Shown here: piece after piece, positions 30,377-64,000 of the stretch
Layout of the letters: every line of letters starts with the position of its first letter
Position numbering within the stretch: the first letter of the stretch is position 1
Assembly: GCA_002104945.1 (NCBI GenBank)
Contig: MCFH01000038.1
Location: 475,434-539,433 of the forward strand
Length of the DNA stretch: 64,000 nt
From: Piromyces finnis finn
Lineage: Eukaryota > Fungi > Neocallimastigomycota
Reading direction: 5' to 3'
The notes under the pieces: generated by a model
Told to the model about the DNA's origin: nothing
Seen by the model: only the letters and a program-made list of their open reading frames with translations
The model's database searches: none
Program-made: the position numbers and the translations under genes

Positions 30377-30379
30377 TTT

Positions 30380-30411
30380 TGATAAATAATTAAATTTATA
30401 AATTATGAATT

Positions 30412-30457
<46 letters not shown>

Positions 30458-31149: not shown

Positions 31150-31180
<31 letters not shown>

Positions 31181-31593: not shown

Positions 31594-31658
31594 TTTTTGA
31601 TACAAAGAGGATATTATAAAAGGTTTTATCTTCAACTTCTGTTTTTCTCTTATAATAA

Positions 31659-32262
31659 TGTAATGTTGAACACTGAAAGAATAGATTAGGATATCTATTC
31701 TATTACAATAACACTATAATTAAAATAAAAATTGTTTTATAAGAAATATCTTTTATTATAATAGAAATTTATTAATAACAATTACATTGATAAAATGATG
31801 AAAAATATCTTCTATTTATATTTTTCCTAAATACATTTATATTATATTATAACTATTTATTTAAAATATTATTTAAAACCTACACTAAAATCTTAATTAT
31901 TAATAAAATATTTAAACTATAACTATTTTAGTAAAATTAAATAAGCAATTCAAATTAAGTACTATTCAATTTGAATATGTGCCCATGTATTATTTATATA
32001 TTAATCATTTATTATTTATATACTATTCATCTTTTTCTATCAAAAACAATACTAAAACTAAGAAATTAAATTTCTCAATTTAATTTATTTGTAAAACATT
32101 AAAAATAAATTAATAATTTATTTTGTTTCAAACTTTAATTATTAATAAATAAATTATGTTTCATTTTCTTTTTCTGTAATATAAATTGTGTAACTTAAGC
32201 AATAATACTTGTGGCTTAAGTTACATTAAAGATATCAAGCTGAGGCGTTTGATATCTTTACA
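31659..32262 (-). mobile_element. Solo LTR, family B (subtype B2), reverse orientation
   Basis: Reverse complement of the B LTR, closest to 43351-43965; TSD ambiguous (TAATG only if the terminal TG is shared). Confidence 0.9.
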
Positions 32263-35200: not shown

Positions 35201-35405
35201 AATAGAAGATATTTTTCATCATTTTATCGATGTAATTGTTATTATTAAAATTCTATTATAATAAAAGATATTTTTAATAAAACAATTTTTTATTTTTATT
35301 TTAAATTTAGTGTTATTGTAATAGAATAGATATCCTAATCTATTCTTTCAGTGTTCAACATTACAATAACAATTACCTAACGAAAACCAAGAATACGTTA
35401 GGGTA

Positions 35406-35556
35406 TCTACCGCCGAGTAAAAGAAGAAAAAGAAGGAATAACTACTGAGTTGAAATTGAGTCTATCGCCGAGTAAAAGAAGAAAAAAGAAGGAATAACTA
35501 CTGGGTTGAAATTGAATCTACAGCCGCCGAGTGGGAAGAAAGGACCAAGAATAACC
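35406..35556 (+). repeat. 55-56-bp tandem repeat in the element B leader, 2 copies plus a degenerate third
   Basis: TCTA.CGCCGAGTAAAAGAAGAAAAAGAAGGAATAACTACTG.GTTGAAATTGA starting at 35406 and 35461; partial unit at 35517. Confidence 0.88.
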
Positions 35557-35661
35557 ATTAAGGATTGATTAGTAGTACAAAACTTGTTCGACACTGCTTT
35601 TGCAGAACGCGTCTGAATAACTTTTGTATTGTTTGATATACTAAAATTATCTTTTATAAAT

Positions 35662-35696
<35 letters not shown>

Positions 35697-35743
35697 ACTT
35701 ACTTGAAATAGTAGTAAGAAAACATTTTATTTATTTTAGTAAG

Positions 35744-44887: not shown

Positions 44888-45161
44888 TATTATGAGTTGA
44901 CTCTGTCCATTCAAAAATTGAATTTGAAAAAAAAAATTTTCACAAGCCTTAATTAATAATAAAAATGATATCCACCAGGTAGGCGATATTATTTGTATTA
45001 TTAATGCAATAACGATAGAAAAGCCTATTAAAAATAATAAATAAGAAGGTAATTCAATTTATTTTTTTATGTACTTTTTTTTACCACTTTATATTTATTA
45101 TTTAAGCCAAAACTACGATTTTTCCAACACCCTTAAGTCTACTTGGGAGTCAGCATATATT

Positions 45162-45495
45162 TGTAATGTTGAACACTAAAAGAATAGATTAGGATATCTA
45201 TTCTATTACAATAACACTAAATTTAAAATATAAATAAAAATTGTTTTATTAGAAATATCTTTTATAATAGAAATTTTATTAATAACAATTACATCGATAA
45301 AATGATGAAAAATATCTTCTATTTATATTTTTCCTAAATACATTTATATTATATTATAACTATTTATTTCTTATATATTATTATTTAAGATCTACACTAA
45401 AATCTTAATTATTAATAAATATTTAAACTATAACTATTTTTAGTAAAATACAATTGGCAATTCAAATTAAGTACTATTTAATTTGAATATGTGCC
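45162..45495 (-). mobile_element. Truncated family B LTR (3' half only)
   Basis: Reverse complement of the B LTR end; stops abruptly at a fold-back junction. Confidence 0.88.
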
Positions 45496-46386
45496 GGATA
45501 TATGTATATTAATAACCATTAATATACATATATCCGGCCAATAAATGATGACCAGAATATATGGTTTCAATTGAAATATTTGTGGGCAAACTTATGGCCA
45601 CAAGTGTAAAATATTCTAAACTAAGTTCAGGTTTGTATACACTCAATAGACTAAACTACACTTTAAATTATTTTTAATTTTTATATTTTATTTATTAAAT
45701 TATTTTAAATAACTAAACTAAAACAACCGTTGATTACTTTACCGTGAAGGATATTTTACCAGAGCCCTCACTAGGTAATCAATATTTATTATTAAAAAAA
45801 ACAACTAAACTAATTATAAACTAATGTTAATTTATCTAAACAAAATTAACCTATACGATTTTCCAACTATCGTTTCAATAGTTGAAAAATTTTCTTTATT
45901 TATACTTTTTAAATAAATTGAATAAATTCTAATATACATGTTTTAATATTATAATTTTACATTGTTTACATTTATACATTTATTAAAAGAAATTGTTTGT
46001 ATTAAACTATTTAAATTCAATTTATTTAATAAAGAATTTTCTAAACTTAAAATAAAGTTTTTATTTATTTACTATATGGTTGATTATATTTCAAACATAT
46101 ATTCAATTTATTTATTTCTAATTTTGAGGCTTAGTTTATAAAAAAAATTTTTTTATTATCTAAAATATTTATTGGTTAAAAATTATTTAATTTAAAATTC
46201 TATTTTATCATCAAAAACTTTATCTTATCAATAAGTTAAATTTTACATAAATTTATGTTAATGTATTGTGATGTAAATTTTTGTAAAATTTACGGTACAT
46301 TAATTCAATACATGATACATTAATATACATACGTATTAAATACATTATTTAACTAATTCAATATTTTATAACAAGTATTTCCTACA
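45493..46386. mobile_element. 5'-truncated LTR-like element D2 containing solo LTR N (45605-46370)
   Basis: Matches the end of D1 (51690-51806); N has TGTAAAATATT...AATATTTTATA termini and TSD ACAAG. Confidence 0.78.
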
Positions 46387-46387
46387 A

Positions 46388-47155
46388 TGTAAGAATAAAT
46401 ACTTATTATTTATTCTTAGTATTAAACATTACAAATAATTTATTTAGTTAATAATCATTAATCCATTAGATTATATTAATATATTTATTTATTATTATAG
46501 TTATTTGTTAAGTTAAATATTGTAAATATTTATTTAGTTAATAATTATTCATTCGCTATATTAGATTAATTAATTTATTTAATTATGTATTTATACATTC
46601 ATTTATATATATACTTGTATTATAAAAGATAAAACACATACTAATTACATTAATAATATTATACAACTATATATTAGTATGTAATAGGAAACCGGATATT
46701 AAGGTTTTACCCGTTATCAACGGTTTTACTTAATATTACGATGATTGGTATGATTAGAATATCAATCAAATAACTTTTTAGGTTTTTCTTCTAGTCTTTT
46801 CCTAAAAAGATTCTTGTTAAGATTAGAATGTTCTTAGAAATTTTAATTTAATAGAATAAAACATATAAATAGTACTCTTGAGTTCGATTTGAGAAATCAA
46901 GAGTTATTATTATAAGATTAATTATAATAAATAACTTTATACAAAATAATAAGTAATAAAATAAATATTAAAAAAACTATTAAATACACAAAATAATTCT
47001 GATACATTTGGTTTTGTTTATTATAATTTCTTATAATAAACTCATTAAGTTAAGTTTCTAATTTTACCTTTATTTTCACATTTTAATAATAGTTTATATT
47101 ATTAATTTAAAGCTAATAATTATTATTATATAATAAATATAATATAATTATTACA
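46388..47155 (+). mobile_element. Solo LTR, family A (diverged copy A1)
   Basis: TGTAAGAAT...ATTATTACA, TSD TACAA, conserved A-family core. Confidence 0.87.
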
Positions 47156-47161
47156 TACAAA

Positions 47162-47193
47162 TGATAAATAATTAAATTTATAAATTATGAATT

Positions 47194-47236
<43 letters not shown>

Positions 47237-47310
47237 TTAAAACACAGATATTTGAAAATTAAAATAATTAACATGTATAAAATTATTAAATTAAAAACTA
47301 TAAATGTAAA

Positions 47311-47341
<31 letters not shown>

Positions 47342-47754
47342 TAAATTAAATAGTTTATATTTGTTTATAATTATACTTTAAAATAATAATTTTGTATAAA
47401 TAGTGATAGAATTATTTTATTTTAAAAGATGTTCCTAATAATCCAGTAAAATTAGATAATAATATTAAATTTTATTAAAATAATAGTTGTGATTATATTT
47501 ACATACATTCAAGATGTATTAAACCATAACATATATATATTTAATAATACAAGAGTTATTAAATATTAAAACTTTATAATTAAATAAAATAATTTTATAT
47601 TTTAAACTAACAAAGACTTGCAAATGAACAAGTATAAAAATCATTTATTCTATTTTTATTTTCTTATTTATTTTTATTTATTAAATTTTAGATACAAATA
47701 TTATCACTTTCTATATTCCTTTAGAGAATTAAGATAATATTTTCTATTGTATAA
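47162..47754. mobile_element. Solo LTR-like element C2
   Basis: Near-identical to C1 without the B insertion; right terminus decayed; CAAA on both flanks. Confidence 0.78.
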
Positions 47755-47759
47755 CAAAA

Positions 47760-49590
47760 TGTAATAATTATTATATATTTAATAATAATTATTATCTACA
47801 ATATAATAATACAAATCGTAATATGTATTATTAAATTGAGAAGTTTCTTAATAGTAAATAAAAATGAATACTTATCTTAAAGAGTTTATTATAAGTGAAT
47901 TATAATAACAAACACAAAATATTAAGACTATCTTTAATGTAAATTTTTTATGAATATGGTTTTTGAAAGGGGTATTTATTATAATTGTCTTAAAATAATA
48001 ACTCTGGATTCTTTAGTGGAATTCCAGAGTCCTTATATTTATAATTTTTTGATAATTTAAAGTTTAATAAAGAATTTCTAATCTTAACAAATAATCTTTT
48101 TAGGAAAAGACTAGAAGAAAAACCTAAAAAGATATTCGATTGATAACTAATATATCAATCATCGTAATATTAAGTAAAACCGATTAAAATTCGGAAAAAC
48201 CTTAATATCCGATTGTCCTAATATGTATTTATATTTTCTAATTGTTTCTATAAGTTATTTCAAGATACGATACATAAATATAAAATACAAACGTAAAATA
48301 AAATATATAATGTTTCTTATAAAATGTAATACAAAAATTATTAATTAAAAAATAAATGAATGTTTACTATTATTTTAAATATATTACTAAATTAAATAAA
48401 TAAATAATTAATATAGTAATTAAATAAATTTTAAATTAAGTAAATGAATAATTAATATCAATATAGATAAATGTTTATAGTAATTTAAATGAATGTATGC
48501 TAATAGTTTAAATAAATAATTAATTTAATAATTAAAAAATAATTTGTTAAGTTTTTGGATTTGGTTATGCGGCCAGGTCAGAATGTTATCAATTATATAG
48601 TAAATATGTTTTTTAAGAAATTAAATTTAACTATAAAATAACACTTTAAACTTCCAAATGAGAAATTAATATTTATTCTCTAGAATAACTTTTTTATAAA
48701 ATTTTATTTATTTATTAATAATAATATAAATGATAATATATTTAATAACTATATAATTAAGATTATAACTATAATCTTTACAAAGAATTAAAATCGAATT
48801 CAATTCATTCTATTTTATATTCTTTGTTCAGATTATTAAATTGATAAAAATAAAGTATTACATGTAATATGTTAATAATATAATAAGATTGTTTGTTTGT
48901 TTGTTTGTTTGTTTTGTCATGACATAAAATAAAATAAACATATGATTAATCATTTAAACACTTGATCCATTAATCTATTTTATAATAATTAAAATTATTT
49001 AATTTATAAATGTTAACCGTTACACCTAAATGGTTTAGTTCTATTTTTAGTAACAGTCACTATCATTAATTAAATTAATATAATTAGAATTTCTATTGAT
49101 ATCTTTTTAATTTTCGTCAAGTCATAAGAAATGTCTATGATCCATACTTGATATCATATTAATTTTAATTTACTTATTAAAATCTTCGAATGATCATATC
49201 TTCCTTAAATGACCTGTTAGAAGGACCGCGATTGTACCAAAATGTAGCCTTTTCCTTAAGCTTTCTAATAAACCTGGTTTCACAGCCGTAGCACTTACAG
49301 CCGTAGCGATCGTTTTTGGCGAGTTACACCTTGTTTCGTGTTTGTTTATTTTTGGTTAAGGGTTATAGTGTATTGATATTAAATTTTTTGAAATCATAAC
49401 CCTTTCACTGAACCAAAATTTAAAAGGTGACTTTTAAAAGTGTTTTAAAATAATTATTGGGATTATTTAATTCTAATTATTATGTTTAATTAATTATAGA
49501 TATTATCTGAATTTGTTTTAAATCCAGTTAATATCTTCACATAATTAAATAAGAATTAATTTATACAAAAAATAATTATTAATTCTTACA
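47760..49590 (-). mobile_element. Solo LTR, family A (copy A2, reverse), interrupted by solo LTR M1 (48545-49541)
   Basis: A2 has TSD CAAAA; M1 has TG...CA termini and TSD TAATT, and the A sequence resumes right after it. Confidence 0.88.
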
Positions 49591-49596
49591 CAAAAA

Positions 49597-51302
49597 TGAT
49601 ACAATATTTTCATAAAGTACCACAAAATAATTTATTTATTTTAGGACAAAGCAAATAGGGAATTATAAAATAATATATTCTAATAAAGGAAGTTAATAAT
49701 AACAATTTCAATACTTTTAATAAGTAAAATAGAAAGAAAGAAACATGTAATTTATATAATATTTTTGTTATATCTTCAATCTTTATTTATAATTAATGAA
49801 TGAAAGGTTTTTTTACAATTAAAAGAATAAGAATAATTTATATTTAAGAACAAATAATATAACCTAATAGAATTATTTAACTCCTTTAAATAATTCTCTT
49901 CCAAAATATTCTTCCCAACTAATTATTCCTCTCTTTTTTTTTTTTTTTTTTTTTTTTTTTCTCTTTGTTCTTTTTATACTATTTTTATATCATTTTTCCT
50001 ATAACTCCGCTATATTATTAGAATTATTATTACTATTATTGACTATGTACATTAATGTACATTAATAATTTATTCTACAATATTATATTATTACTATTTT
50101 CTAACCTAAATTACTTTTTTGTTAAGTTTTTGGGTTTGGTTATGCGGCCAGGTCAGAATGTTATTAATTATATAGTAAAAATGTTTTTTAAGAAATTAAA
50201 TTTAATTATAAAATAACACCTTAAACTCCCAAATGAAAAATGAAAAATTTATATTTACTTTAAAATAACTTTTTATAAATTTTTTATTTATTTAATAATA
50301 ATAATATAAATGATATTATAAGTAACTATATAATTAAGATTATAACTATAATCTTTACAAAGAATTAAAATCGAATTCAATTCATTCTCTTTTATATTCT
50401 TTGTTCAGATTATTAAATTGATATTAATAAGAATAAAGTATTACATGTAATATATTAGTAATATAATTAAATAAGTAATAAGATTGCTTGTTTGTTTGTT
50501 TGTTTGTCATGACATAAAATAAAATAAACATATGATTAATCATTTAAACAGTTGATCCTAATTAGTAATTATAAAAACTATTCAATTAATAATTCATCAT
50601 TATTAATTGATATTACCATAACATATTTGTTATAATTAAATAATTATTATTTTCAAAATTATTTCTAATAAAACTTGCCGTTAACCTATTTTATAATAAT
50701 TAAGATTATTTAATTTATAGGTGTTAACTGTTACACCTAAATGGGTCTAGTTCTATTTTTAGTAACAATCGTTATCATTAATTAAATTAATATAACTAAA
50801 ATTCCTATTGATATATTTTTAATTTCATCAAGTCATAAGAAATATTTATGATCCATACTTGATATCATATTGATTTTAATTTACCTAATAAAATCTTTAA
50901 ATGATCATAACTTCCTTAAATGATCAGTTAGAAGGACCGCGATTGTACCAAATTGTAGCTTTCTTCCTAAGCTTTCCAATAAACCTAGTTTCATCACCGT
51001 AGCACTTACAGCCGTAGCGATCGTTTTTGGCGAGTTACACCTTATTTCGTACTTGCTTATTTTTGGTTAAGGGTTATAGTGTATTGATATTAAATTTTTG
51101 AAATCATAACCCTTTCACTGAATCAAAATTTAAAAGGTGACTTTTAAAAGTGTTTTAAAATAATTATTGAAATTATTTAATTATAATTATTATGTTTAAT
51201 TAATTATAGATATTATCTGAATTTGTTTTAAATCCAGTTAATATCTTCACATCACTTTCTATATTCCTTTATAGAATTAAGATAATATTTTTCTTCGTAT
51301 CA
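49597..51302. mobile_element. LTR-like element P (TGATAC...GTATCA, C-type right end) containing solo LTR M2 (50120-51251)
   Basis: 6-bp terminal inverted repeat and A-runs on both flanks; M2 is a paralog of M1 but has no TSD, so a deletion is likely. Unity of the two halves of P is inferred. Confidence 0.6.
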
Positions 51303-51310
51303 AAAAATCG

Positions 51311-51806
51311 TGTAAAAGGTTTTTATATATATTAGTTAATAGGTTAAATATAACAAGTTAATTAAGTTAGTTATTACCTCTCTATACGAGTTAATAACTA
51401 AATAAAGTTTTATAAAAAATAATAAAAGAACTAAAATAAATATTATAACACAAAAATAAATATAAAACAAATAAATATTAATATGAAATATTATTTACTT
51501 AAATAATTATATTTTAATTATATCTTTTATTTATTTATTATAATTATCTACATTAATTATTATTATAGCTATTAATTTACTTTAATACTAACGCTAAAGT
51601 ATTTAACGTTAGTTTTGACTATACTATTTAACTATATGAGTTTATTTTCTTTACCACTTGATTGGGTAAAGCAAATAAACTTCCTATTTAATTAATAACC
51701 ATTAATATATGGTTATACATATATTTGGCCAATAAATGATGACCAGAATATGTGGTTTCAATTGAAATATTTGTGGGCAAACTTATGGCCACAAATATTT
51801 CTTACA
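51311..51806. mobile_element. Solo LTR-like element D1
   Basis: TGTAA...TTACA termini, paralog D2, 13-bp subterminal hairpin; flanks do not match as a TSD. Confidence 0.65.
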
Positions 51807-51807
51807 A

Positions 51808-52883
51808 TGATGCGTTGACCGATATATTTTTGAATAATATAATATTTTATATAAATAATAAATTCTAATATTTATGATGAAACAATAAATTTAAAATAAA
51901 ATAAAATATGTTTTATAATTAACAAATAAATCACTCAAAAACTCGAAAATAAACTCTTTTTATTATGTTTAAATTATCTCTTTATTATATTTATAATTTA
52001 TTTATTGTCTATTTATTGTCCCCCCTTTATAAAGAAGAATTTTATCTTCCTTTTATACATTTTCATTTATTACATGTATTATTATTTTTAACTATTAAAT
52101 GTTATTATTACTATTGTTATTATTTATTAAAATTAAAAGAATAAATTAAAATTATGTCTTAGTATTATAAAATATTATAGAATATTACTTATTTGATTTT
52201 CTTATTACTTCAAAATGTTTAAATTTAGAAAAATTATTATAAATTATCATTGACTATCATTAAATGTATAATACCTTGAATAAAATAATTAAAATTTAAA
52301 ATTAAAATAATATTAAAATAAAATTAAAATGAAATTAAAATATTAAAAGTATCAATTATTATAAACACTCATTTTATACAGAAACATAAAAGAGTTCTGT
52401 ATTTTATCTTTGAAATTGTTATTATTGTTCTATTTCCAGGCTTTAAATTAATCACTTTTAGTAATAATTACTCAGTTATTTATTTGTTAATTTATATATA
52501 TAAGTTTGAAAGAATATCTAAAGAACACTTGGATAAAACACTAGAATTAATAATTTAATGTATATCATTTTATTTTTTTAGTTTATTTATTCATTTTTAT
52601 TTACTTATTATTATTTTATTATTTTAATACATTTTTGGATTGAGTCGTTTTATTTTATTTAATAATTTATTTTATTATTATCTCTATTAAGTCGTTTTTA
52701 TTCATAATTTATTATTTAATAAAGAGAATATTATTTATTTAAAAGAAAGGGTTATATTTCCATAAAATTATTATTTATTCATTTTTAAGGGTTATTATCT
52801 TTTATTTTTATTATAAGTCGCTATGGGTTAAGTCGTGTTTATTCGGCTAGTTTTTATTACGTTTTTATGTGAGTAGCGTATCA
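51808..52883. mobile_element. Solo LTR-like element E2
   Basis: Inverted paralog of E1; TSD ACAA after removing element A. Confidence 0.8.
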
Positions 52884-52886
52884 ACA

Positions 52887-55800
52887 TGTAAGAATTAATA
52901 ATTATTTATTGAATAATTATTAATTCTTATTTAATTATTTTTTTAATTATTAAATTAATTAATTATTTAAATTATTAGCATACATTCATTTAAATTACTA
53001 TAAACAGTTATTTATATTAATATTAATTATTCATTTACTAAATGTAAAATTTATTTAATTATTATATTAATTAATTATTTATTTAATTTAGTAATTTATC
53101 TAAAATAATAGTAAACATTCATTTATTCTATTATTTAATAATTTTTGTATTACATTTTATAAGAAACATTATGTATTTTATTTTACGTTTGTATTTTATA
53201 TTTATGTATCGTATCTTGAAATAACTTATAGAAACAACTAGAAGATATAAATAAATATTAGGACAATCGGATATTAAGGTTTTTCCGAATTTTATTCGGT
53301 TTTACTTAATATTACGATGATTGATATATTAGTTATCAATCGAATATCTTTTTAGGTTTTTCTTCTAGTCTTTTCCTAAAAAGATTATTTGTTAATATTA
53401 GAAATTTTTTATTAAACTTTAAATTATTAAAAAATTATAAATAAAAGAACTCTGGAATACCACTTAAAAATCCAGAGTTATTATTATAAGAACTATTATA
53501 ATAAATAACCTTTATTAAAACAATATTAATAAAATATTTTAAATTAATTAACATTAAAAGTTTTGTGTTGTTTATTATACTTCCTTATAATAAACTCTTA
53601 TTAAGATAAGTATAAAATTTTATTTTAACTTCTCAGTTTAATAATACTAATTATTATTAAATTGAAGATAATAATTATTATTATATAATATATATAATAA
53701 TAATTATTACAATAATAACTCTCCTACATCAGATTGTTTAATAATTATTATTTTATTGGCATTAGAATTTCAATTCACAATATAAAATTTTGCAAAAAAT
53801 AAATAAATACAATATATTAATAATTAATAATACATAAAAAAAAAAAAAAAATTACCAATAAGAAAAAAATATATATATATATTACCAATCAATATATAAA
53901 AAAAAAAAAAAAAAAAAAAAAAATTTTTTTTTTACCAATCAAATGTATAAAAAAAAAATTTTTTAAATTCTTTGCCAATTAATTAGATATTATTGAAATT
54001 ATATATAAAAAGTTAAATTTTCAAAAAAAAAAAAAAAAAATTGATAATAATAGTAATAATAATAGATAACAATAATAACAATAACAAAAGATATATAAAC
54101 TGTATTATATTATAAAATATCAATATTTTCACAAATAAGATATACTACAATACTACAGTATTAGTAAAAAAAATATAATAATAATATCAATAAATAATAT
54201 TTTATTCTACACTGATCTTATTTTATTTTTATAATTTAAAAATAGATAATATGGAATTCAATAGTAATAGTCAAGACATACAAGAAAATACTCCAAGGAG
54301 CGATAAGGCAACTGTTGAAACTTCCAAATTAATAGCTACCCTAACAGATATTCTACCAGCATTCCTCTCGCCTAATGGGATTCTTGCAAAAGAATCAGAA
54401 ACTCAAGACGCGCCTAACTTATTGGAAATTATTGCTCAGAGTGAGGATTTCTTCGCAGAACATCCTAACTCTTTCTTGAGCGACGACAATAAGAGTTCCT
54501 TCATCATAAACAAGTTACATGGAACCACAAGGAAATGGGGGCTATCTCTATTAGCCGATGGAACTCTGAAGAATCTAAGTTATGATAATTTTAAGGAACT
54601 ACTTTTAAGGAACTTTGATGGAGGGGATAGCAGAAAAGAAAAATATGTTCTCATGGAAAAGCTATGGAAGTTAAAGCAGCAACAGTTGGGGAAAGTAACT
54701 GACTACACTATTGAATTCCGCCGCATCGCAAGTAGGATAGGATGGCAAGACGAAGTTTTCATTGATATTATTGGAAAGGGCCTACTAGATCGAGTCCGCG
54801 AAGAGTATGACAAGATTGAAAAACCAAGAACCTTGTTTGAGGCTACCAATGCTATCATAGGTATCGATAGGAAATGCTACTTAGAAAGTTATATCAGACA
54901 CAAACCAAGTAAAATTCATGGAAAACATCATAAATCTTTTGGAAGGAAAAAGCACGACTTAACTAAAGTTGAGAATAAGTTTACATCGTTCAACCAAAGA
55001 AAGGGCAAGACTAAGAGTGAAATTTTATCAGCAAATTACACTCCTAATAACAAAACCTCAATGACAACTGTTTTCACTATTCACATAAAGGGAAAAGTCA
55101 TCAAATGTAATTTTTTGATTGACTCAGGATCTGCGAAAAGCTTTATCTGCCGAACCTTTGCTACCAACAACAAATTACCAACTTCAGGTCTCACCTCTCC
55201 CATCAATATTCAGCTTCCCAACAGTAAAAACATGACCATCAGACATGTTACTACCCCTTTGAAGCTCAAGTTAATGGATCATGTTGAGGATTACGAATTT
55301 TTTATTGGTAATCTTCAACTTCACGGCATCTGTGGAATTCTAGGAAGGGATTGGCTTGCAATTCATAATCCTTATATTAATTTTAAAACAAATAAAATAT
55401 ATTTCTTGGATTATTATTGCAAAGATCATTGTAAGTCTTGTAGAGGTAATAAATTTGTTTTTAAATCAAAAGATGTTACAGCTACAATAGTTTATAATGA
55501 AAACTGTATTAACGACTCTATTATCCCGGAGAATATCACAGAAGAAGAAATCCAAGACCACAACTACAACTGGTGCAACGCTATGATAGAGATGGGAACT
55601 ATCATAGATGGGAAGGCTACCGAGGATGCAACCATCAGCAAAGCTCTAGCCAAAGAAGACATTATAAAGAAGTACTACTCTAATTTAATGAAGGTGTTCG
55701 AAAAGACAGAAGCCGACAAACTTCCACCTCATCGAGTTTATGACATTTCGATTGACTTAATACCAAATAGTCAATTATACTTTGGTCCAATATATTCATT

Positions 55801-58800
55801 AACAGTTGTCGAGTTAGAAACCTTAAAAAAATATATTAATGAAAATCTTGAAAAGGGTTTCATTCGAAAGTCCAAGTCACCAGCCGGTGCTCCTGTCTTG
55901 TTCGTGAAAAAACATGACGGATCCCTTCGACTATGTGTAGACTACCGACGTTTGAACGCAGTTACCATCAGGAACAGCTACCCCCTTCCAAAGATTAATG
56001 ATTTGATTGAATCATTCAAAAGTGCTTCAATCTTTACTAGGCTCGATCTTAGATCAGCCTATAATTTGGTTCGTGTCAAGGAAGGCCACGAATATTTAAC
56101 TGCTTTCCGAACTCCGCTTGGACATTATGAATATCTTGTAATGCCCTTCGGTCTTCGTAACGCACCTTCGGTCTTTCAAAGATTCATACAAGATGTGCTT
56201 ACAGATGTTATCGGTTCTTATGCTCAAGTCTATTTAGATGATATAATTATTTATTCAAAAAATATAGACGAGCATATCAAGCATGTCAAGAAAATACTTC
56301 AACTCCTTATCGATAATGGCCTCTATGTGAAACTCGAAAAATGCGATTTTCACGTTAAGTCAACTACATTCTTAGGATTCAATGTCTCTCCAAATGGCCT
56401 TACAATGGATCCTGACAAGGTGAAATCAATCTTGGATTGGCCAACGCCAAAAAACTTAAAAGAACTCCAGAGTTTTTTGGGTTTATGCAACTTTTACAGA
56501 AAGTTCATAAAAAACTTTGCCGAAATAATGGAACCTCTTCGTAGACTACTAAAAGGTAACTCTGTTTTCAATTGGGATACTCAAGCTGAACGGTCCTTCA
56601 ATCTACTTAAACAGGCTTTTAAAAATGACGAATTACTTATCTTTCCAAATCCAGACAAAGAATTCGTAGTTGAATCAGACGCAAGTGACTTTGCGTTAGG
56701 ATGCGTTCTCTCACAAATTAGCGATAAAGATAATATGTTACATCCTGTAGCATTTTACTCAAGATCTTTGAACAAAGCTGAAGCTAACTACACTATCTAT
56801 GATAAGGAGCTTCTTGCTGTTATTACTGCCTTTGATGTATGGAGACATCATTTAGAAGGCGCAAAGTTCCCAATTCAAGTTATCACCGATCACAAAAATC
56901 TACTCTATTGGAAAAAGCCTCAACGTCTTAATCAGAGACAAATCCGCTGGGGCATGTTCTTGTCAAAATTTGATTATAGAATTTCTTTCAGACCCGGTGC
57001 TAGAAGTGGGAAGCCTGACTCGCTCTCAAGAAGGCCAGATTACAAACCAAATGAATATAAATCTAATGAATATATCATTCCTGAAAAGAATATTTGCTGT
57101 GCCACAAGAGATAATATTAATAATCTTATTGAGTCACAGAGGTCTGATAAATATTGTAGAAACATCCTTTCCAAAATCAAATCAGGGACTGAAATAAAAA
57201 GTGCCTTGTTCAAAATCGTCGACGGTGTTCTCCATTTTCAAAACCGTATATTAGTGCCATCTGCGTTGAAAGGAAACATATTAAAATCCTTTCATGATAC
57301 TCCTACAAATGGTCACCAGGGTATTGACAAAACGCTTGAAAAACTTAAACGTTACTACTGGTGGCCTAATATGAAAAATGATGTTAGAAATTTTGTCCTT
57401 TCATGTAAAACTTGTGGAAAGAACAAAATAAGAAGACATAAACCATATGGTAAGATTCAACCTCTCCCTGTTCCTAACAAGCCATGGGAAATAATAGGTG
57501 TAGACTTCATTGTCTACCTTCCAAGCTCTCAGGACTGCTCTTGTATTATGGTTGTATCGGATCATTTTACTAAAATGATTCATTTAATTCCCTGCTCCGA
57601 CGTACCCTCTGCTGACCTAACAGCTAAACTTTTGTTATTCAATGTATTTCGCTACCATGGATTTCCTAAGGTAATAGTTTCGGATCACGGTACCCAGTTC
57701 TCCTCCGAATATTGGACTTCGCTTTGTTCGGCCTTGCATGTAAAGCCTCGACTTGCTACAGCTCACCATCAACAGTCAAATGGACAAGTCGAGAGAGCCA
57801 ACTCAGTGATTGAACAATATCTTCGCTGTTACTGTTCTTCGGCACAACATGAATGGTTTTCTTATCTTCCCTTATGTGAGTTAGCTTATAACAATTCTCT
57901 TCACAAGTCTATAGGAATGTCGCCATTTTTCGCCAATTATGGGTTCCATCCGGAATGTAATATTGATTCTCCCCCGATTCTACTTAAGGATAACGCTTCA
58001 TCTCTTACTAGAGATTGGTCGTCCCATTTTAATGCCTTAAAAAAACAACTAAATCAAGCTAAAGAAGACTTCAAGAAGTATAGAGATAATCACAAATCCA
58101 CGGGTCCAGAGCTTAAGGTCAATGATATGGTTTGGCTCAAGCGCCATTATTTTACTAATGAACCTGCTAAGAAGCTAGCTTCTCAATATTTAGGACCATT
58201 CCGCATTTCTGAAAAGAGGGAACGTATGAATTACAGGCTTGAATTACCAGAAAATCTTAACATTCATCCTGTATTTCATATTTCACAATTGGAACCTTAT
58301 ACGAGTAGAAATCCTGAACTAAAGGAACATTTATAAAGGGAGCAATGTAAGAATTAATAATTATTTATTGAATAATTATTAATTCTTATTTAATTATTTT
58401 TTTAATTATTAAATTAATTAATTATTTAAATTATTAGCATACATTCATTTAAATTACTATAAACAGTTATTTATATTAATATTAATTATTCATTTACTAA
58501 ATGTAAAATTTATTTAATTATTATATTAATTAATTATTTATTTAATTTAGTAATTTATCTAAAATAATAGTAAACATTCATTTATTCTATTATTTAATAA
58601 TTTTTGTATTACATTTTATAAGAAACATTATGTATTTTATTTTACGTTTGTATTTTATATTTATGTATCGTATCTTGAAATAACTTATAGAAACAACTAG
58701 AAGATATAAATAAATATTAGGACAATCGGATATTAAGGTTTTTCCGAATTTTATTCGGTTTTACTTAATATTACGATGATTGATATATTAGTTATCAATC

Positions 58801-59170
58801 GAATATCTTTTTAGGTTTTTCTTCTAGTCTTTTCCTAAAAAGATTATTTGTTAAGATTAGAAATTTTTTATTAAACTTTAAATTATTAAAAAATTATAAA
58901 TAAAAGAACTCTGGAATACCACTTAAAAATCCAGAGTTATTATTATAAGAACTATTATAATAAATAACCTTTATTAAAACAATATTAATAAAATATTTTA
59001 AATTAATTAACATTAAAAGTTTTGTGTTGTTTATTATACTTCCTTATAATAAACTCTTATTAAGATAAGTATAAAATTTTATTTTAACTTCTCAGTTTAA
59101 TAATACTAATTATTATTAAATTGAAGATAATAATTATTATTATATAATATATATAATAATAATTATTACA
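52887..59170 (+). mobile_element. Full-length Ty3/gypsy element A; 825-bp LTRs at 52887-53711 and 58346-59170
   Basis: TG...CA LTRs with one visible mismatch, polypurine tract AAAGGGAGCAA, TSD CAACA/CAAAA. Confidence 0.97.
54251..58336 (+). CDS. Intact Gag-Pol polyprotein of element A (1361 aa, no chromodomain)
   Basis: LIDSGS; MPFGLRNAP; YLDD; ESDAS; HD...GH...CKTC; DFI..D..S; GPF...HPVFHISQLEPY, then stop. Confidence 0.96.
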   Translation: MEFNSNSQDIQENTPRSDKATVETSKLIATLTDILPAFLSPNGILAKESETQDAPNLLEIIAQSEDFFAEHPNSFLSDDNKSSFIINKLHGTTRKWGLSLLADGTLKNLSYDNFKELLLRNFDGGDSRKEKYVLMEKLWKLKQQQLGKVTDYTIEFRRIASRIGWQDEVFIDIIGKGLLDRVREEYDKIEKPRTLFEATNAIIGIDRKCYLESYIRHKPSKIHGKHHKSFGRKKHDLTKVENKFTSFNQRKGKTKSEILSANYTPNNKTSMTTVFTIHIKGKVIKCNFLIDSGSAKSFICRTFATNNKLPTSGLTSPINIQLPNSKNMTIRHVTTPLKLKLMDHVEDYEFFIGNLQLHGICGILGRDWLAIHNPYINFKTNKIYFLDYYCKDHCKSCRGNKFVFKSKDVTATIVYNENCINDSIIPENITEEEIQDHNYNWCNAMIEMGTIIDGKATEDATISKALAKEDIIKKYYSNLMKVFEKTEADKLPPHRVYDISIDLIPNSQLYFGPIYSLTVVELETLKKYINENLEKGFIRKSKSPAGAPVLFVKKHDGSLRLCVDYRRLNAVTIRNSYPLPKINDLIESFKSASIFTRLDLRSAYNLVRVKEGHEYLTAFRTPLGHYEYLVMPFGLRNAPSVFQRFIQDVLTDVIGSYAQVYLDDIIIYSKNIDEHIKHVKKILQLLIDNGLYVKLEKCDFHVKSTTFLGFNVSPNGLTMDPDKVKSILDWPTPKNLKELQSFLGLCNFYRKFIKNFAEIMEPLRRLLKGNSVFNWDTQAERSFNLLKQAFKNDELLIFPNPDKEFVVESDASDFALGCVLSQISDKDNMLHPVAFYSRSLNKAEANYTIYDKELLAVITAFDVWRHHLEGAKFPIQVITDHKNLLYWKKPQRLNQRQIRWGMFLSKFDYRISFRPGARSGKPDSLSRRPDYKPNEYKSNEYIIPEKNICCATRDNINNLIESQRSDKYCRNILSKIKSGTEIKSALFKIVDGVLHFQNRILVPSALKGNILKSFHDTPTNGHQGIDKTLEKLKRYYWWPNMKNDVRNFVLSCKTCGKNKIRRHKPYGKIQPLPVPNKPWEIIGVDFIVYLPSSQDCSCIMVVSDHFTKMIHLIPCSDVPSADLTAKLLLFNVFRYHGFPKVIVSDHGTQFSSEYWTSLCSALHVKPRLATAHHQQSNGQVERANSVIEQYLRCYCSSAQHEWFSYLPLCELAYNNSLHKSIGMSPFFANYGFHPECNIDSPPILLKDNASSLTRDWSSHFNALKKQLNQAKEDFKKYRDNHKSTGPELKVNDMVWLKRHYFTNEPAKKLASQYLGPFRISEKRERMNYRLELPENLNIHPVFHISQLEPYTSRNPELKEHL

Positions 59171-59186
59171 CAAAAATTAATGTTAT

Positions 59187-59268
59187 GTCAGTTTGTCCGA
59201 GTGGTTAAGGAGTCAGACTTGAAATCTGATGGGCTTTGCCCGCGCAGGTTCAAACCCTGCAGCTGACG
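59187..59268 (+). tRNA. tRNA-Ser (TGA)
   Basis: 82 nt; TCAGA-CTTGAAA-TCTGA anticodon arm, long variable arm GGGC-TTT-GCCC, GGTTCAA T-loop, downstream T6. Confidence 0.97.
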
Positions 59269-59331: not shown

Positions 59332-59403
59332 AGGGGCGTTCCGGATTTGAACCGAAGACCTATTGATCTGCAGTCAATTGCTCTACCGCTGAGCTAACAC
59401 CCC
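59332..59403 (-). tRNA. tRNA-Cys (GCA)
   Basis: Reverse complement GGGGTGTTAGCTCAGCGGTAGAGC-ATTGA-CTGCAGA-TCAAT...GGTTCAAATCC...CGCCCC-T. Confidence 0.96.
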
Positions 59404-60569
59404 TTTTTGACGAGTTACACCTTATTTCGTACTTGTAAAATATTGTATTAGTTAAATGTATTAGTTAAATTGTCACGAATACTAGTGAAATTACAATTTC
59501 AAGATCACTTGGAATTGTGAAATCACTTATGAAAATTCAAAATCAACAAATATTTTATTTTCAAATAAATTATAAAATTTTATTAAGAAATATTTAAAAA
59601 TTTAGAAAAGGTTAAAATATGACCTTAACCCTTAATAATTTTTATAATAAATAACTTTAACCCTTATCGTTAAAATGGAATAAGAAAAAACACGCGTATC
59701 TCCTCAACGAATGACGATTTTTGAATAAAAATGTTTTGGTTATAATTAAGTTCGTTAGAAAGCCACGCTCGAGACAAACAACATATCTTAAAATCAGGTC
59801 AATATCTCTGCTGGTTCACGAGATATTCCAATTTAAAGATATTTTGTTAGCAATGATTAATTGTTTATTCAGAGAATGATCACCCCTGATATATCAAACA
59901 TAAATCATTCACTCAAAGTATAAAAAATTATTGTTTAATTAAATTAAAATTATTTTCCGGAACTAATTAACTTTATTTTATAATAATTATTTCAACAACA
60001 TAATTTATAATCTTTGAACTAGAGGATTATAATTATTAATATTATATTCAATGAATTATATTATAATTAAGAAATAATTAATATTATGAATATTATAAAC
60101 AATAGTTATTTTTAATAATTAGTAGTAAGTCTTAAGTTTAGCCTTAGTATTATAAAATATATTATGAATATAATCATGTACTAAAAAGTTATTTTAGTAT
60201 TAAATGTAAAATTACAAATAGTATAAATAGTTTAGAATAGTTTTATGAATTAAATCTTTGTAAAGATTATTATCTTATTAATACTTAATAAGTATTACTA
60301 TTAAATAATCTTATTATTATATATATTCTTTAAATAAAATAAAAAGGAATTATTTTAACTATAATACATAATTTAATTATTCATTTATAAATCAATTAAG
60401 ATTATTTTAATAAAACATTTTTTTTCTAACCTAGTTATCTTTTAACCTTTTATTTAATTTGATATTTTAATATTAAATTATAAGTTTAGTAAAACTTTTA
60501 CAATAATCTTTACCGCGTTTTTTACCATAACTACCTTAGGAAAAAACTTAATTTAAAAATTTAAAAAAA

Positions 60570-61481
60570 ATGACTCAACCAACACCTAAACCAGTTCAAC
60601 AATTCCTAAAGCCTCAAGATTTAGAAGAATTTAAGAAAAATCTTTGTGGTGAATTAGACAAGTATATCACTCAACAATTGGATAAAAATACCACCTCCTT
60701 GTTAGAACGTATGGATGCTATGTTAAAGGAACTTAAGAGTCGTGCTAATTATACTGAAACCGAGGAATCTTCTACTGATTATGATGAAGATCATGATGTT
60801 ATAATGCGTAATAGAACCTATCCTATCAAACAAGTACCAGATCCAGGATTCTTTACTGGTGATACTACTCAGACTGAGTTATTCTGCGAACTCTGCCAAG
60901 CTACCTTTAAAACTCCACCTAACAATCAACTATCTGAAGAAGTAAAAATTAACTTTGTTGTTGTTAGATTACGTGATTCTGCCAGAACTTGGTATCATAT
61001 TAAATATAAAGATGGTATTACTCCTATGACTATGAACGAACTATTAAGTGAATTAAACGAAGCTTTTTCAAATGTTACCAGTACCAAATTAGCCATGATT
61101 CAATTAATAGAATTAAGACAAGCTTATGGAAAAGTGAACGATTATATTAACAAATTTAGAGATTTAAGTCGTTGTTTAGAGATAGATGACATTAGTCTTT
61201 CACTAATATTTTTAAATGGTTTACATCCAAAATATAAGAATGAAATTAAGAAAGCTGATATTTTACCTAACACTTTAAGTGAAATGGTTACAAAGTGTAT
61301 AATTTTTGAAAATTCTCTTGCTACTAATAATAAATTAAATATCAATAATAATAATAATAAAAATCAACATTACAATAAGAGAAACAATAGGAAATTCAAT
61401 AAGAATAAAACCCATTATCAAAATTCAAACAATAATAATAATTATGTCAATAAAGTTCAAAAAATGAACTCAAAAAACTAA
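60570..61481 (+). CDS. Gag of element H
   Basis: PDPGFFTGD, ARTWY and Y.NKFR..., typical of retrotransposon capsid domains. Confidence 0.88.
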   Translation: MTQPTPKPVQQFLKPQDLEEFKKNLCGELDKYITQQLDKNTTSLLERMDAMLKELKSRANYTETEESSTDYDEDHDVIMRNRTYPIKQVPDPGFFTGDTTQTELFCELCQATFKTPPNNQLSEEVKINFVVVRLRDSARTWYHIKYKDGITPMTMNELLSELNEAFSNVTSTKLAMIQLIELRQAYGKVNDYINKFRDLSRCLEIDDISLSLIFLNGLHPKYKNEIKKADILPNTLSEMVTKCIIFENSLATNNKLNINNNNNKNQHYNKRNNRKFNKNKTHYQNSNNNNNYVNKVQKMNSKN

Positions 61482-64000
61482 GAAATGAACTCTCAAGAGA
61501 GTCTAAGAGAGTTCATAATACAAAAATAATACATTACAACTTTCCTACATATGACTCTAAAATAAATAAAAAATTGCCTACAACATTTTTCAACTTAAAA
61601 TTTTTTATCCCAATTAAATTAAACAAACTTTATGATTTAAAAAATTCAATTAATAAAAATCAATACAATTTAATTTTAGATAGTGGCTCATATTGCAACT
61701 TTATTTCAATCAACTTGGTCAATAAATTAAAACTAAAACCACACAAATTATTACACTCAATTGAAATAAATGGAATTAGTGGTTCAATATTTATTGATAC
61801 ATACACCTTCTTATATTTTAAGACTACTATCTATATTAATCATTCAAAATTTTTAATTACTTTTAAAGAAAAATTTCTAATTATTAAAAATCTTCCAACA
61901 GATCTGTTATTAGGCAATAAATTTTTACACAAATATCAACTACATTTTAATTATAATAAAAATTTTGTATATTCAAGTTTAAATTTTAACAATTTTAAAA
62001 AATTAAATTCTAATAAAATTATATATAAAATTAATAAAAACCGATTGAATAAATCCAAAAATTTAAAAATTAAAAACATTAATCATAATAAATTAACTTT
62101 CAATACATCTTTTAATAATTTGAAAAATTACTCTAAACCAAAATATCAAAATTTCAGCTATAATTACTTTATTCACTCATTTTTAGCTAATAGTGAAAAA
62201 GATTATAATACTGATAATGATGAAGACTTCAAATTAGAAGAAGTACCAGAACCATATCGTGATTTAGCGGAAGTTTTCAGCAAGGTTAAGGCTGATAAAC
62301 TACCACCACATAGGCTAACGGATTGTAAAATCGTTTTACAAAAAGATGCTTCTTTACATTATGGTCCTATATATCCTCTATCTGAAGATGAATCCCAAGT
62401 TCTTAAAGAATACATAGATGAAAATCTCAAGAAAGGATTCATTAGACCATCTGAATCTCCAGCTGGTTATCCTGTTTTATTTCAGAAAAAGAAGGATGGA
62501 TCGTTACGTCTTTGTATTGATTACAAAAAATTAAATGCAGTTACAATTCGTAATTCTTACCCACTTCCTCTAATTACTGATATTATCGAAAGAGTGAAAG
62601 GTGCTAAATTTTTTTCAAAATTAGATCTTCGTTCTGCTTACAATTTAGTGCGTATTCGTGAAGGAGACGAATATAAGACAGCTTTTAGAACTAAATATGG
62701 TCACTATGAATATTTAGTAATGCCTTTTGGTCTAAGAAATGCCCCTGCTACATTTCAATCATTTATTAATTCAGTATTACGCCCTTATTTAGAAAAATTT
62801 GTTATTTTATATTTAGATGATATTCTGATTTACTCGGAAACATTAGATGAACATATACAACATGTTCGTACTGTTCTCCAAACACTGCTCAAAAATAATT
62901 TATTTGCTAAATTAAAGAAATGTGAATTTCACAAGCCAGAAGTTGAATTTTTAGGACACGTTATATCAGGCAATGGTATATCTACTGATCCAAAGAAAAT
63001 TAAATCTGTCCAAGAATGGCCTACACCTAATTGTGTAAAAGATGTTCAACGCTTTGTTGGATTATGCAACTATTATAGAAGATTTATAAAAGATTTTGCT
63101 ACTATTGCTAAACCGCTTCACAATTTAACAAAGAAAAATACTAGTTTTAATTGGAATGATAAATGTAATAACTCATTTTTAGAATTAAAAAAGAGACTAA
63201 TCTCTTCACCTATTTTATTACATCCAGATCCAACCAAACCATTTATTGTCGAATGCGATGCTAGTAATTTTGCCATTGGTTGTATACTTTCTCAAAAGGA
63301 TGAAGATAACAAATTACATCCTGTAGCATATTATTCAAGATGTTTAAACAATGCTGAATTAAATTATTCAATTACTGAAAAGGAACTTTTAGCTATAAAA
63401 TGTGCATTTTCTACCTGGAGACATTTATTACTAGGTGCTAAATACCAAGTAACCGTTTTTACTGACCATAAAAACCTTCTATACACCTTAGGTGGTAAAG
63501 TCGGAAACCAACGTCAACATCGTTGGCATTTATTTTTCCAAGAATATAATTTTCAATTAATATACCGCCAAGGAAGAAAAAATGGTAAACCTGATAGTTT
63601 GTCAAGAAGACCTGATTACGAGAAAAATAATGTTGAACCTAAACCAGAACATATATTAGATTATAAAAACGTTCCCGATACTCCATGTTTTGTTGGTATT
63701 GTTGGTTCTCTCATTGATCAAATAATAGAAAATTATAAGGATGATGAAAATGCGAATAATATTTATCTTTACTTTAGTCCTAATAATGCTAATCAAGGTT
63801 ACTTTTACAGACCTTTCAGAAAAATGGAAAAATTTAAAATAAAAAATAATTTAATTTTATATAATAATTTAATTTATGTACCAGAAAAACTTCATGTAGA
63901 TATTTTAACCAGGTACCATGATAACGCTACTGCTGGACATTTAGGTATTCGAAGAACTGAAGAACTAATTAACCGTAATTTTTTTAACCGTAATTTTTTG
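61472..64000 (+). CDS. Pol of element H in the -1 frame (protease, RT, RNase H, start of integrase); runs off the window and is absent from the ORF track
   Basis: Frame open from 61454; LILDSGS, MPFGLRNAP, YLDD, ECDAS, RYHD..TAGH. Confidence 0.92.

What the first reader, a model, noticed from the sequence alone, without database searches (positions are those of the whole stretch)
45493..59186. Conveyor-belt stack: eight LTR elements abut end to end leading up to tRNA-Ser
Seen: D2, A1, C2, A2, P, D1, E2 and A are separated by only 1, 6, 5, 6, 8, 1 and 3 nt. TSDs overlap the previous element's terminus (TACAA, CAAA, CAAAA, AAAA, ACAA, CAACA/CAAAA). Removing elements one at a time places A at 16 nt, E2 at 14 nt and D1 at 11 nt from the tRNA. 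Older ones come out at about 14-18 nt if D1 had a 5-bp TSD. Inference: several families repeatedly hit the same narrow Pol III start window, each pushing predecessors away, so the stack is an ordered record of invasions. Caveat: D1 has no matching TSD (AATCG vs ATTAA), so distances to its left are model-dependent.
Basis: partly seen in the sequence, partly recalled or inferred. Interest (0 to 1): 0.92.

Follow-up and report, generated by a model that had tools for sequence, protein, structure and literature searches.

The report
tRNA-anchored stack of LTR retrotransposons
Upstream of a serine tRNA gene in the gut fungus Piromyces finnis, eleven Ty3-like retrotransposon insertions have piled up because each copy lands at a fixed distance from the tRNA gene and pushes older ones outward: the yeast Ty3 habit in a new fungal group, striking but of a known kind.

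Summary
Eight LTR elements abut with gaps of 1, 6, 5-6, 6, 8, 1 and 3 nt and end 16 nt before tRNA-Ser(UGA). Genome copies fix every boundary. Three more solo LTRs are nested inside the eight, making eleven insertions.

The host is Piromyces finnis, an anaerobic gut fungus. The elements are chromodomain-less Ty3/gypsy retrotransposons from several deep lineages (40-50% pol identity).

In 23 non-redundant tRNA genes, repeat ends pile up 10-17 nt upstream (18x background) and at 66-67 nt (8x). Families A, A1, A2, D, E and P sit in these same registers at other tRNA genes.

Repeated Pol III-directed insertion that pushes older copies outward is well supported. Three inner elements duplicated the last bases of their outer neighbour, and the two nested P LTRs lie where the 66-nt register predicts if their hosts were then innermost.

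A strict chronological record is only partly supported. Divergence shows no gradient with distance. D1 and P2 lack target-site duplications, which suggests a rearrangement. The non-targeted family B cuts off the left end.

This is the Ty3/DGLT-A mechanism in a phylum where my searches found no report of it. The scan has noted similar stacks elsewhere in this genome.

The parts
45161..45495 (-). Truncated LTR of the abundant non-targeted family B (LTR positions 269-606). It forms the left break of the stack.
   Evidence: breakpoint read
45496..45603 (-). D2, left piece. It is a 3' fragment of a D-family LTR; about 380 nt are missing.
   Evidence: Strand is inferred from full-length D in L001, whose ORFs run opposite to this orientation.
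45605..46370 (.). F, a solo LTR nested in D2 with TSD ACAAG. It lies 16 nt from D2's tRNA-side end.
   Evidence: (genome copies match query 107/110 to 873/876)
46371..46386 (-). D2 terminal 16 nt, including the second ACAAG copy.
46388..47155 (+). A1, a solo LTR of 768 nt with TSD TACAA on both sides. The left copy is D2's last four bases plus one.
   Evidence: (many copies match 1-768; 1-2 differences from them)
47162..47754 (.). C2, a solo LTR of about 593 nt with TSD ACAAA / (A)CAAA.
47760..48544 (-). A2, left piece. Inverted solo LTR of a distinct A subfamily.
   Evidence: (about 30 copies at 99%, starting at query 6 = 47760)
48545..49541 (-). P1, a solo LTR of 997 nt nested in A2 with TSD TAATT. 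It lies 49 nt from A2's tRNA-side end (second register).
   Evidence: Strand is inferred from full-length P in L020.
49542..49590 (-). A2, right piece (its 5' 49 nt). A2 as a whole has TSD CAAAA on both sides.
49597..50119 (.). Low-copy LTR family. G as a whole has TSD AAAAA on both sides.
   Evidence: (42 candidates, nearest copy 96%)
50120..51251 (-). P2, a solo LTR of 1132 nt nested in G, 51 nt from G's tRNA-side end. No matching TSD.
51252..51302 (.). G tail. It resembles a C-family 3' end and finishes in GTATCA.
51311..51806 (-). D1, a solo LTR of 496 nt with no TSD (AATCG versus ATTAA). It has 6 private changes and sits near the root of two younger D subfamilies.
51808..52883 (.). E2, a solo LTR of 1076 nt with a 4-bp TSD ACAA that repeats D1's last three bases.
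52887..59170 (+). A, a full-length Ty3/gypsy element. LTRs are 52887-53711 and 58346-59170 (1 mismatch in 825). The ORF 54251-58336 encodes gag-PR-RT-RNaseH-IN-SH3. TSD is CAACA / CAAAA.
59171..59186 (.). 16-nt spacer: A's right TSD copy plus 11 native bases.
   Evidence: The same spacer lies next to an A2 LTR at a paralogous tRNA-Ser (C8).
59187..59268 (+). tRNA-Ser(UGA), the anchor of the stack. It is followed by a T-run.

Best explanation
The region is a pile-up of chromodomain-less Ty3/gypsy retrotransposons that integrate at fixed distances upstream of RNA polymerase III genes.

At least five families (A with its subfamilies A1 and A2, plus C/G, D and E) cut the DNA 11-18 nt before the first base of the mature tRNA. 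The P family cuts at 66-67 nt. F probably cuts at about 28 nt.

Each new copy lands between the tRNA and the previous copy, so older copies move outward by one element length. The gaps left behind are only the few bases by which the registers differ, plus the 4-5 bp TSD.

Most copies later collapsed to solo LTRs. Only the innermost copy (A) is still full length and looks active.

Shown here: the anatomy, the registers, their genome-wide use by these same families, and the relative order at three junctions and two nested hits.

Inferred by analogy with Ty3 and DGLT-A: integrase (or RNase H) is tethered to TFIIIB/TFIIIC on the tRNA gene.

After the stack formed it was disturbed at least once. 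There is a recombination or conversion event around P2 - G tail - D1, and a deletion at the B/D2 joint.
For: Element identity:
- The ORFs carry the Ty3/gypsy domain order (Pfam).
- The best solved relative is the Ty3 Gag-Pol of entry 7q5b (E = 3e-142).

Registers:
- Repeat-homology ends occur at 2.5 per nt at 10-17 nt and 1.1 per nt at 61-68 nt, against 0.13 per nt background, over 23 non-redundant tRNA genes of seven species.
- The second register stays at 66-67 nt from the tRNA while the host LTR's end varies from 11 to 28 nt.

The same families at other tRNA genes:
- full-length D at 12 nt
- full-length A1 at 18 nt
- full-length E at about 16 nt
- A2 at 16 and 17 nt
- full-length A at 15 nt
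- P at 66 nt

Insertion footprints:
- 5-bp TSDs are verified for D, the A types and P at many loci.
- D sits at the identical site with the identical TSD but in opposite orientation at two paralogous tRNA-Arg loci (L016 and L018).
- TSD overlaps fix D2 before A1, and D1 before E2 before A.
- P1 and P2 depths of 49 and 51 nt imply that A2 and G stood 15-17 nt from a tRNA when hit.

Other support:
- All five full-length register-type elements visible in sequence are innermost (window A; L001, L009, L015, L020).
- A second stack of the same build lies upstream of tRNA-Met in this window.
Against: - There is no age gradient. Private or nearest-copy differences are A 0-1/825, E2 3-4/1077, D1 6/496, P2 2/991, A2 4-5/787, P1 7/996, C2 2-3/499 and A1 1-2/768. 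G's nearest copy is only 96% identical.
- D1 and P2 lack TSDs.
- The order of A1, C2, A2 and G cannot be read from the TSDs alone.
- By coordinates only, a G LTR pair lies outside an A2 LTR at C8. So full-length copies are not always innermost, and family order is not fixed.
- No read-level check of the assembly was obtained.
Confidence: 0.85

Rival explanations
1. Chimeric stack. The mechanism is the same, but the present array was joined from blocks built at different tRNA genes, by ectopic recombination or gene conversion between D (and P) LTRs. The outer block (D2 to G) would then record invasions at another tRNA gene that has since been deleted, not at tRNA-Ser.
For: - D1 and P2 are the only two elements without TSDs, and they flank one 59-nt segment (51252-51310).
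- D1 is the clock outlier: 6 private changes in 496 nt, more than any neighbour on either side.
- The peel-back through D1 gives G a distance of 14 nt, while P2's depth implies 15-16 nt.
- The arrangements 'C tail, 8-nt gap, D' and 'P, C tail' exist at other loci and could act as donors (L018, L016, L020).
Against: - The junctions outside D1 and P2 form an unbroken TSD chain.
- The 8-nt gap left of D1 is what two precise registers predict anyway.
- No donor locus with identical sequence was found in the 200 kb of genome I could read.
Confidence: 0.25
2. LTR-end or junction targeting. New copies are drawn to A-rich junctions beside existing LTR termini, whatever the distance to the tRNA. Under this reading, position in the stack says nothing about age.
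For: - The TSD chain at D2's end is symmetric. Insertion in the order G, A2, C2, A1 at D2's terminus gives the same sequence.
- That order also matches the weak divergence ranking G > A2 ~ C2 > A1.
- E sits 1 nt after a D end at five loci.
Against: - Every family involved has its own fixed distance to tRNA genes where it is innermost.
- P's position follows the tRNA, not the host LTR end, so A2 must once have been innermost.
- The share of E copies that sit beside a D LTR (about 4 of 20) matches the share of tRNA genes with D innermost.
- A relaxed Rfam scan finds no cryptic tRNA or other Pol III gene inside the stack.
Confidence: 0.05
3. Assembly artefact. Near-identical LTRs were wrongly chained by the assembler.
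For: - Many LTRs here are 99-100% identical to copies elsewhere.
- No reads could be laid on the region.
Against: - Each junction carries its own coherent TSD logic.
- Nested elements resume their host LTR exactly.
- The same architecture recurs on many contigs.
Confidence: 0.03

Closest known systems
Ty3 of Saccharomyces cerevisiae (Metaviridae)
   Same: It is a Ty3/gypsy element with a 5-bp TSD that integrates in either orientation within a few bases of the Pol III start site, about 15 nt upstream of tRNA genes (PMC10347736, PMC5911963). It is the best solved-structure match of the A polyprotein (7q5b). In yeast, tRNA upstream regions also hold fragments of earlier insertions (PMC10347736).
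   Different: - The elements here come from several lineages only 40-50% identical to each other. Their closest named relatives are fungal chromovirus-like elements from rumen fungi, not Ty3.
- Copy numbers run to hundreds per family and stacks to 8-13 elements, whereas yeast has a handful of Ty3 copies.
- Tethering to TFIIIB is untested.
DGLT-A of Dictyostelium and other social amoebae
   Same: It is a Ty3/gypsy element without a chromodomain, found 13-18 nt upstream of tRNA genes, and is seen as convergent with Ty3 (PMC5006619, PMC6101501).
   Different: - The host here is a fungus (Piromyces finnis), so this is not the amoebozoan clade.
- DGLT-A has about 20 copies, mostly solo LTRs, and no long stacks are described in those papers.
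- DGLT-A uses RNase H and the integrase N-terminus to bind Tfc4. Nothing is known about tethering here.
Ty1/Ty2/Ty4 (copia) and TRE5-A (non-LTR): more distal tRNA-upstream registers
   Same: Like family P at 66-67 nt, they land further upstream of tRNA genes. TRE5 lands at about 50 nt, and Ty1 on the first upstream nucleosome (PMC5006619, PMC10347736).
   Different: P is a Ty3/gypsy element. Its register is sharp to within 1 nt in the cases seen, rather than a nucleosome-wide or 10-nt-wide zone.
Nested LTR-retrotransposon chronologies in grass intergenic regions (SanMiguel and Bennetzen; recalled from memory, not checked here)
   Same: The order of insertion is read from physical arrangement and LTR divergence.
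   Different: In grasses the order comes from nesting at untargeted sites. Here it comes from polar displacement away from a fixed target, and divergence is too low to date the steps.

Membership tests
Ty3/gypsy (Metaviridae) LTR retrotransposon | Direct LTRs with TG...CA ends flanking an internal region | tested here: met
   A: 825-nt LTRs with 1 mismatch. Full-length D, P and A-like elements are seen in L001, L020 and L015.
Ty3/gypsy (Metaviridae) LTR retrotransposon | Domain order gag, protease, RT, RNase H, integrase | tested here: met
   Pfam hits in that order for A, B, D, P and A-like. The best PDB match is Ty3 Gag-Pol 7q5b.
Ty3/gypsy (Metaviridae) LTR retrotransposon | Short target-site duplication | tested here: met
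   5 bp for A types, D, P, F and B; 4 bp for E. 8 of the 10 elements in the stack that can be scored have a matching TSD, exact or with one mismatch.
Ty3/gypsy (Metaviridae) LTR retrotransposon | Polypurine tract and tRNA primer-binding site | tested here: inconclusive
   A polypurine run lies before the 3' LTR of A and of B. No primer-binding site was found against the 12 tRNA species at hand.
Pol III-directed integration (works like Ty3 / DGLT-A) | Insertions concentrated within about 20 nt upstream of mature tRNA 5' ends, genome-wide | tested here: met
   18-fold excess of repeat ends at 10-17 nt over 23 tRNA genes. Family-by-family distances are 11-18 nt.
Pol III-directed integration (works like Ty3 / DGLT-A) | Many different tRNA species are used, in both orientations | tested here: met
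   Ser, Cys, Met, Arg, Glu, Gly and Trp are used. A2 is inverted. D sits at one site in both orientations (L016 versus L018).
Pol III-directed integration (works like Ty3 / DGLT-A) | Physical tethering of integrase or RNase H to TFIIIB or TFIIIC | not testable with these tools
   Needs binding or integration assays.
Pol III-directed integration (works like Ty3 / DGLT-A) | Other Pol III genes (5S, U6) are also targeted | not tested
DGLT-A clade | No chromodomain after the integrase | tested here: met
   No PF00385 hit in A, B, D, P or A-like, while relatives at about 50% identity carry it.
DGLT-A clade | Belongs to the amoebozoan DGLT-A lineage | tested here: not met
   The host gene is 96% identical to a Piromyces finnis protein. 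The nearest pol relatives come from rumen metagenomes and Orpinomyces.

The most novel reading that the evidence does not exclude
Anaerobic gut fungi (Neocallimastigomycota) hold a previously undescribed radiation of Ty3/gypsy lineages. These lineages read the Pol III complex as a ruler with at least two, perhaps three, discrete marks: 11-18 nt, about 28 nt, and 66-67 nt upstream of the tRNA. Different deep lineages are fixed on different marks. The polar stacks give a base-resolution fossil record from which the succession of subfamily invasions could be reconstructed genome-wide. The A family, with an intact ORF and many 100%-identical LTRs, would still be active.
Probability: 0.45. Interest if true: 0.65.

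Novelty: new member of a known kind. Interest (0 to 1): 0.45.

Why it matters
- It extends position-specific tRNA-gene targeting by LTR retrotransposons to a fungal phylum. My searches of the paper library found no report of it there.
- Several lineages share one register and another holds a sharp second register. That makes the question of how integrases measure distance from TFIIIB/TFIIIC testable by comparison within a single genome.
- The stacks explain a good part of the repeat load and of the assembly breaks around tRNA genes in these genomes.
- An active element with a predictable landing site beside tRNA genes could become an integration tool for organisms that still lack good genetics.
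- The stack itself is the expected by-product of such targeting, not a new mechanism.

Tried and rejected
- My first guess of a social amoeba (AT-rich genome, DGLT-A-like habit) was wrong. Host and element proteins point to Piromyces finnis.
- Cryptic tRNA or Pol III gene inside the stack: a relaxed Rfam scan of 45000-53800 gave only hairpin-type miRNA noise. I inspected the 100-nt module at the D LTR end as a possible tRNA mimic. It has a closing stem but no A or B box, so I dropped the idea.
- Dating by nearest-copy identity: this is unreliable. P1 is nested in A2 yet is slightly more diverged. G's 4% and D1's 2-3% distances reflect deep, low-copy lineages as much as age.
- Primer-binding sites were not found.
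- The fetch from genomes stopped after 20 loci, or 200 kb. Orthologous or paralogous stacks could then be compared only by coordinates.
- Strain comparison was not possible. The runs found belong to the same organism, and the best holder is probably the assembly's own sample.


Full report
**What is there.** The window is contig C165:475434-539433 of a 56.5-Mb, 232-contig, very AT-rich genome. A host ORF is 96% identical to a Piromyces finnis ankyrin protein. The closest named relatives of the retroelement polyprotein come from rumen fungi and rumen metagenomes. The organism is therefore an anaerobic gut fungus, not a social amoeba as the base composition first suggested.

The window holds three tRNA genes: tRNA-Met(-) at 27427-27498, tRNA-Ser(UGA)(+) at 59187-59268 and tRNA-Cys(-) at 59332-59403.

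**Anatomy of the stack.** I set each terminus from where homology to many other genome copies begins and ends. I then read the flanks directly. From left to right:

| Element | Coordinates | Notes |
|---|---|---|
| B (truncated LTR) | 45161-45495 | left break of the stack |
| D2 (fragment) | 45496-46386 | carries nested F, 45605-46370, TSD ACAAG |
| A1 | 46388-47155 | TSD TACAA on both sides |
| C2 | 47162-47754 | TSD ACAAA |
| A2 (inverted) | 47760-49590 | TSD CAAAA on both sides; carries nested P1, 48545-49541, TSD TAATT |
| D1 | 51311-51806 | no TSD |
| E2 | 51808-52883 | TSD ACAA |
| A (full length) | 52887-59170 | TSD CAACA / CAAAA |
| spacer | 59171-59186 | 16 nt |
| tRNA-Ser(UGA) | 59187-59268 | anchor |

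With the three nested LTRs there are eleven insertion events.

**What the elements are.** A has 825-nt LTRs that differ at one base. Its 1361-aa ORF carries gag, protease, RT, RNase H, integrase and a Tf2-type SH3 domain, with no chromodomain. At least 19 other A LTRs in the genome are identical to it.

Full-length D, P and A-like elements in other loci have the same build. The polyproteins of A, B, D and P are only 40-50% identical to each other. The best solved relative of A is the Ty3 Gag-Pol of entry 7q5b.

**The target is the tRNA gene, and this holds genome-wide.** With the window this gives 39 tRNA genes, 23 of them non-redundant and free of a second tRNA directly upstream.
- Ends of repeat homology occur at 2.5 per nt between 10 and 17 nt upstream.
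- They occur at 1.1 per nt between 61 and 68 nt.
- Background is 0.13 per nt.

Reading the flanks shows LTR termini at 11-17 nt before Ser, Met, Arg, Glu, Gly and other tRNA genes.

I then matched the coordinates of tRNA-Ser/Cys paralogs and of one further tRNA gene listed against the earlier copy lists. The same families turn up in the same places:
- a full-length D at 12 nt
- a full-length A1 at 18 nt
- a full-length E at about 16 nt
- A2 at 16 and 17 nt
- a full-length A at 15 nt
- P at 66 nt

D, the A types and P make clean 5-bp duplications at many loci; E makes 4 bp. At two paralogous tRNA-Arg loci (L016 and L018), D sits at the same base with the same AAAAT duplication but in opposite orientations.

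**A second register.** LTR ends of P and of two other families lie exactly 66-67 nt before the tRNA. This holds whether the host LTR beneath them ends 11, 12, 14, 22 or 28 nt from the tRNA. The mark is therefore set by the tRNA and not by the host LTR.

Nine of about 41 A LTRs genome-wide are broken at LTR position 45/46. P LTRs abut such breaks at several loci.

F may mark a third register. It lies 16 nt inside D2, and an LTR with the same first 11 bases starts 27 nt before tRNA-Cys. This is tentative.

**Peel-back.** Removing each element with one TSD copy gives these distances to the tRNA at the time of insertion:

| Element | Distance (nt) |
|---|---|
| A | 16 |
| E2 | 14 |
| D1 | 11 |
| G | 14 |
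| A2 | 15 |
| C2 | about 16 |
| A1 | about 17 |
| D2 | about 13 |

All values lie within, or within 1-2 nt of, the range of each family's own norm where one is known (C 14, D 11-12, A types 15-18). The nested P LTRs give an independent calibration. P2's depth of 51 nt implies G stood at 15-16 nt. P1's depth of 49 nt implies A2 stood at 17-18 nt. Both agree with the chain to within 1-3 nt.

**Is it an ordered record?**

In favour:
- A1's duplication repeats D2's last four bases. E2's repeats D1's last three. A's repeats E2's last two. The outer neighbour was therefore already there in each case.
- P1 and P2 show that A2 and then G were each innermost when hit.
- All five full-length register-type elements I could see in sequence are innermost.
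- The tRNA-Met stack in the same window has the same build.

Against, or silent:
- The chain TACAA, ACAAA, CAAAA, AAAAA gives the same sequence under the reverse order of insertion.
- Private substitutions are few: A 0-1, E2 3-4, D1 6, P2 2, A2 4-5, P1 7, C2 2-3 and A1 1-2 (and bit scores). Their rank correlation with distance is about 0.2.
- G's nearest copy is only 96% identical, but G belongs to a low-copy family of deep lineages.
- D1, the clock outlier, is also one of the two elements without a TSD. The other is P2. Together they flank a single 59-nt segment, which suggests recombination or conversion with another 'P - C tail - D' locus.
- By coordinates, a G LTR pair lies outside an A2 LTR at C8, the opposite order of families to that seen here.
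- Family B is not targeted. The full-length B (34761-40978, TSD AATTA) sits inside the RT coding region of an older element. Other B LTRs nest at arbitrary depths. A B-associated deletion ends the stack on the left.

**Verdict.** Repeated Pol III-directed insertion with displacement is well supported (0.85). A strict, undisturbed chronology for all eight elements is plausible but unproven (about 0.6).

The mechanism is that of Ty3 and DGLT-A (PMC5911963, PMC5006619, PMC6101501). In yeast, too, new Ty copies land among fragments of earlier ones upstream of tRNA genes (PMC10347736). I found no paper that reports tRNA-targeted retrotransposons in Neocallimastigomycota. Earlier notes of this scan describe similar stacks, and the 61-66-nt register, on other pieces of this genome. 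My tests agree with them.

**Limits.**
- Only 200 kb of the genome outside the window could be read. Other loci were compared by coordinates alone.
I sent those letters to no search tool afterwards.

Noticed in passing
window 27499-31660: A mirror stack lies upstream of tRNA-Met(-). After 17 nt come an A-like LTR (27516-28455), an LTR of another family (about 28461-29162), E (29166-30376) and C (30380-31594). The C element has a B solo LTR nested in it (30473-31085, TSD GATAG). Gaps are 3-5 nt of T.
   Followed up: partly
window 59404-63500: tRNA-Cys(-) has its own upstream pile. An LTR terminus lies 27 nt from the tRNA. Nested in that LTR, a second-register element starts 64-67 nt from the tRNA. 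Further out are a gag ORF (60570-61481) and RT-like sequence (62342-63483).
   Followed up: partly
window 34761-40978: Full-length family-B element: 606-nt LTRs with 1 mismatch, a 1530-aa ORF and TSD AATTA. It is inserted inside the RT-coding region of an older element. B is the most abundant family (841 first-look candidates) and shows no tRNA register.
   Followed up: partly
window 51018-51056 and 49309-49345 versus 59405-59431: P LTRs contain a stretch of about 30 nt that is nearly identical to the 27 nt directly upstream of tRNA-Cys in this window. It may be a captured tRNA flank. No tRNA-like fold was detected next to it in P.
   Followed up: partly
L016:3497-3992 versus L018:8894-9388: Two paralogous tRNA-Arg loci carry a D LTR at the same base with the same AAAAT duplication, but in opposite orientation. 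This means either independent hits at one position or an LTR inversion.
   Followed up: partly
L003, L005, L007, L011 (tRNA-Glu then tRNA-Arg, 10 nt apart); L008-L010: Tandem tRNA-Glu/tRNA-Arg pairs lie 10 nt apart. In L008-L010 the tRNA-Glu has an internal deletion, and a full-length D sits 11 nt before the remnant.
   Followed up: no
window 45489-45542: A near-perfect 50-nt palindrome lies exactly at the joint between the truncated B LTR and the truncated D2. It gave weak miRNA-type Rfam hits. It may mark the rearrangement.
   Followed up: no
genome-wide: The first look for tRNA found about 2900 candidates. The single tRNA-Arg(UCU) sequence alone occurs at least 33 times, which suggests a very large tRNA gene complement.
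   Followed up: no
window 47200-47240 and 30410-30455: An (AAT)n microsatellite near the 5' end of C-family LTRs varies in length between copies. This lowers their apparent identity.
   Followed up: no
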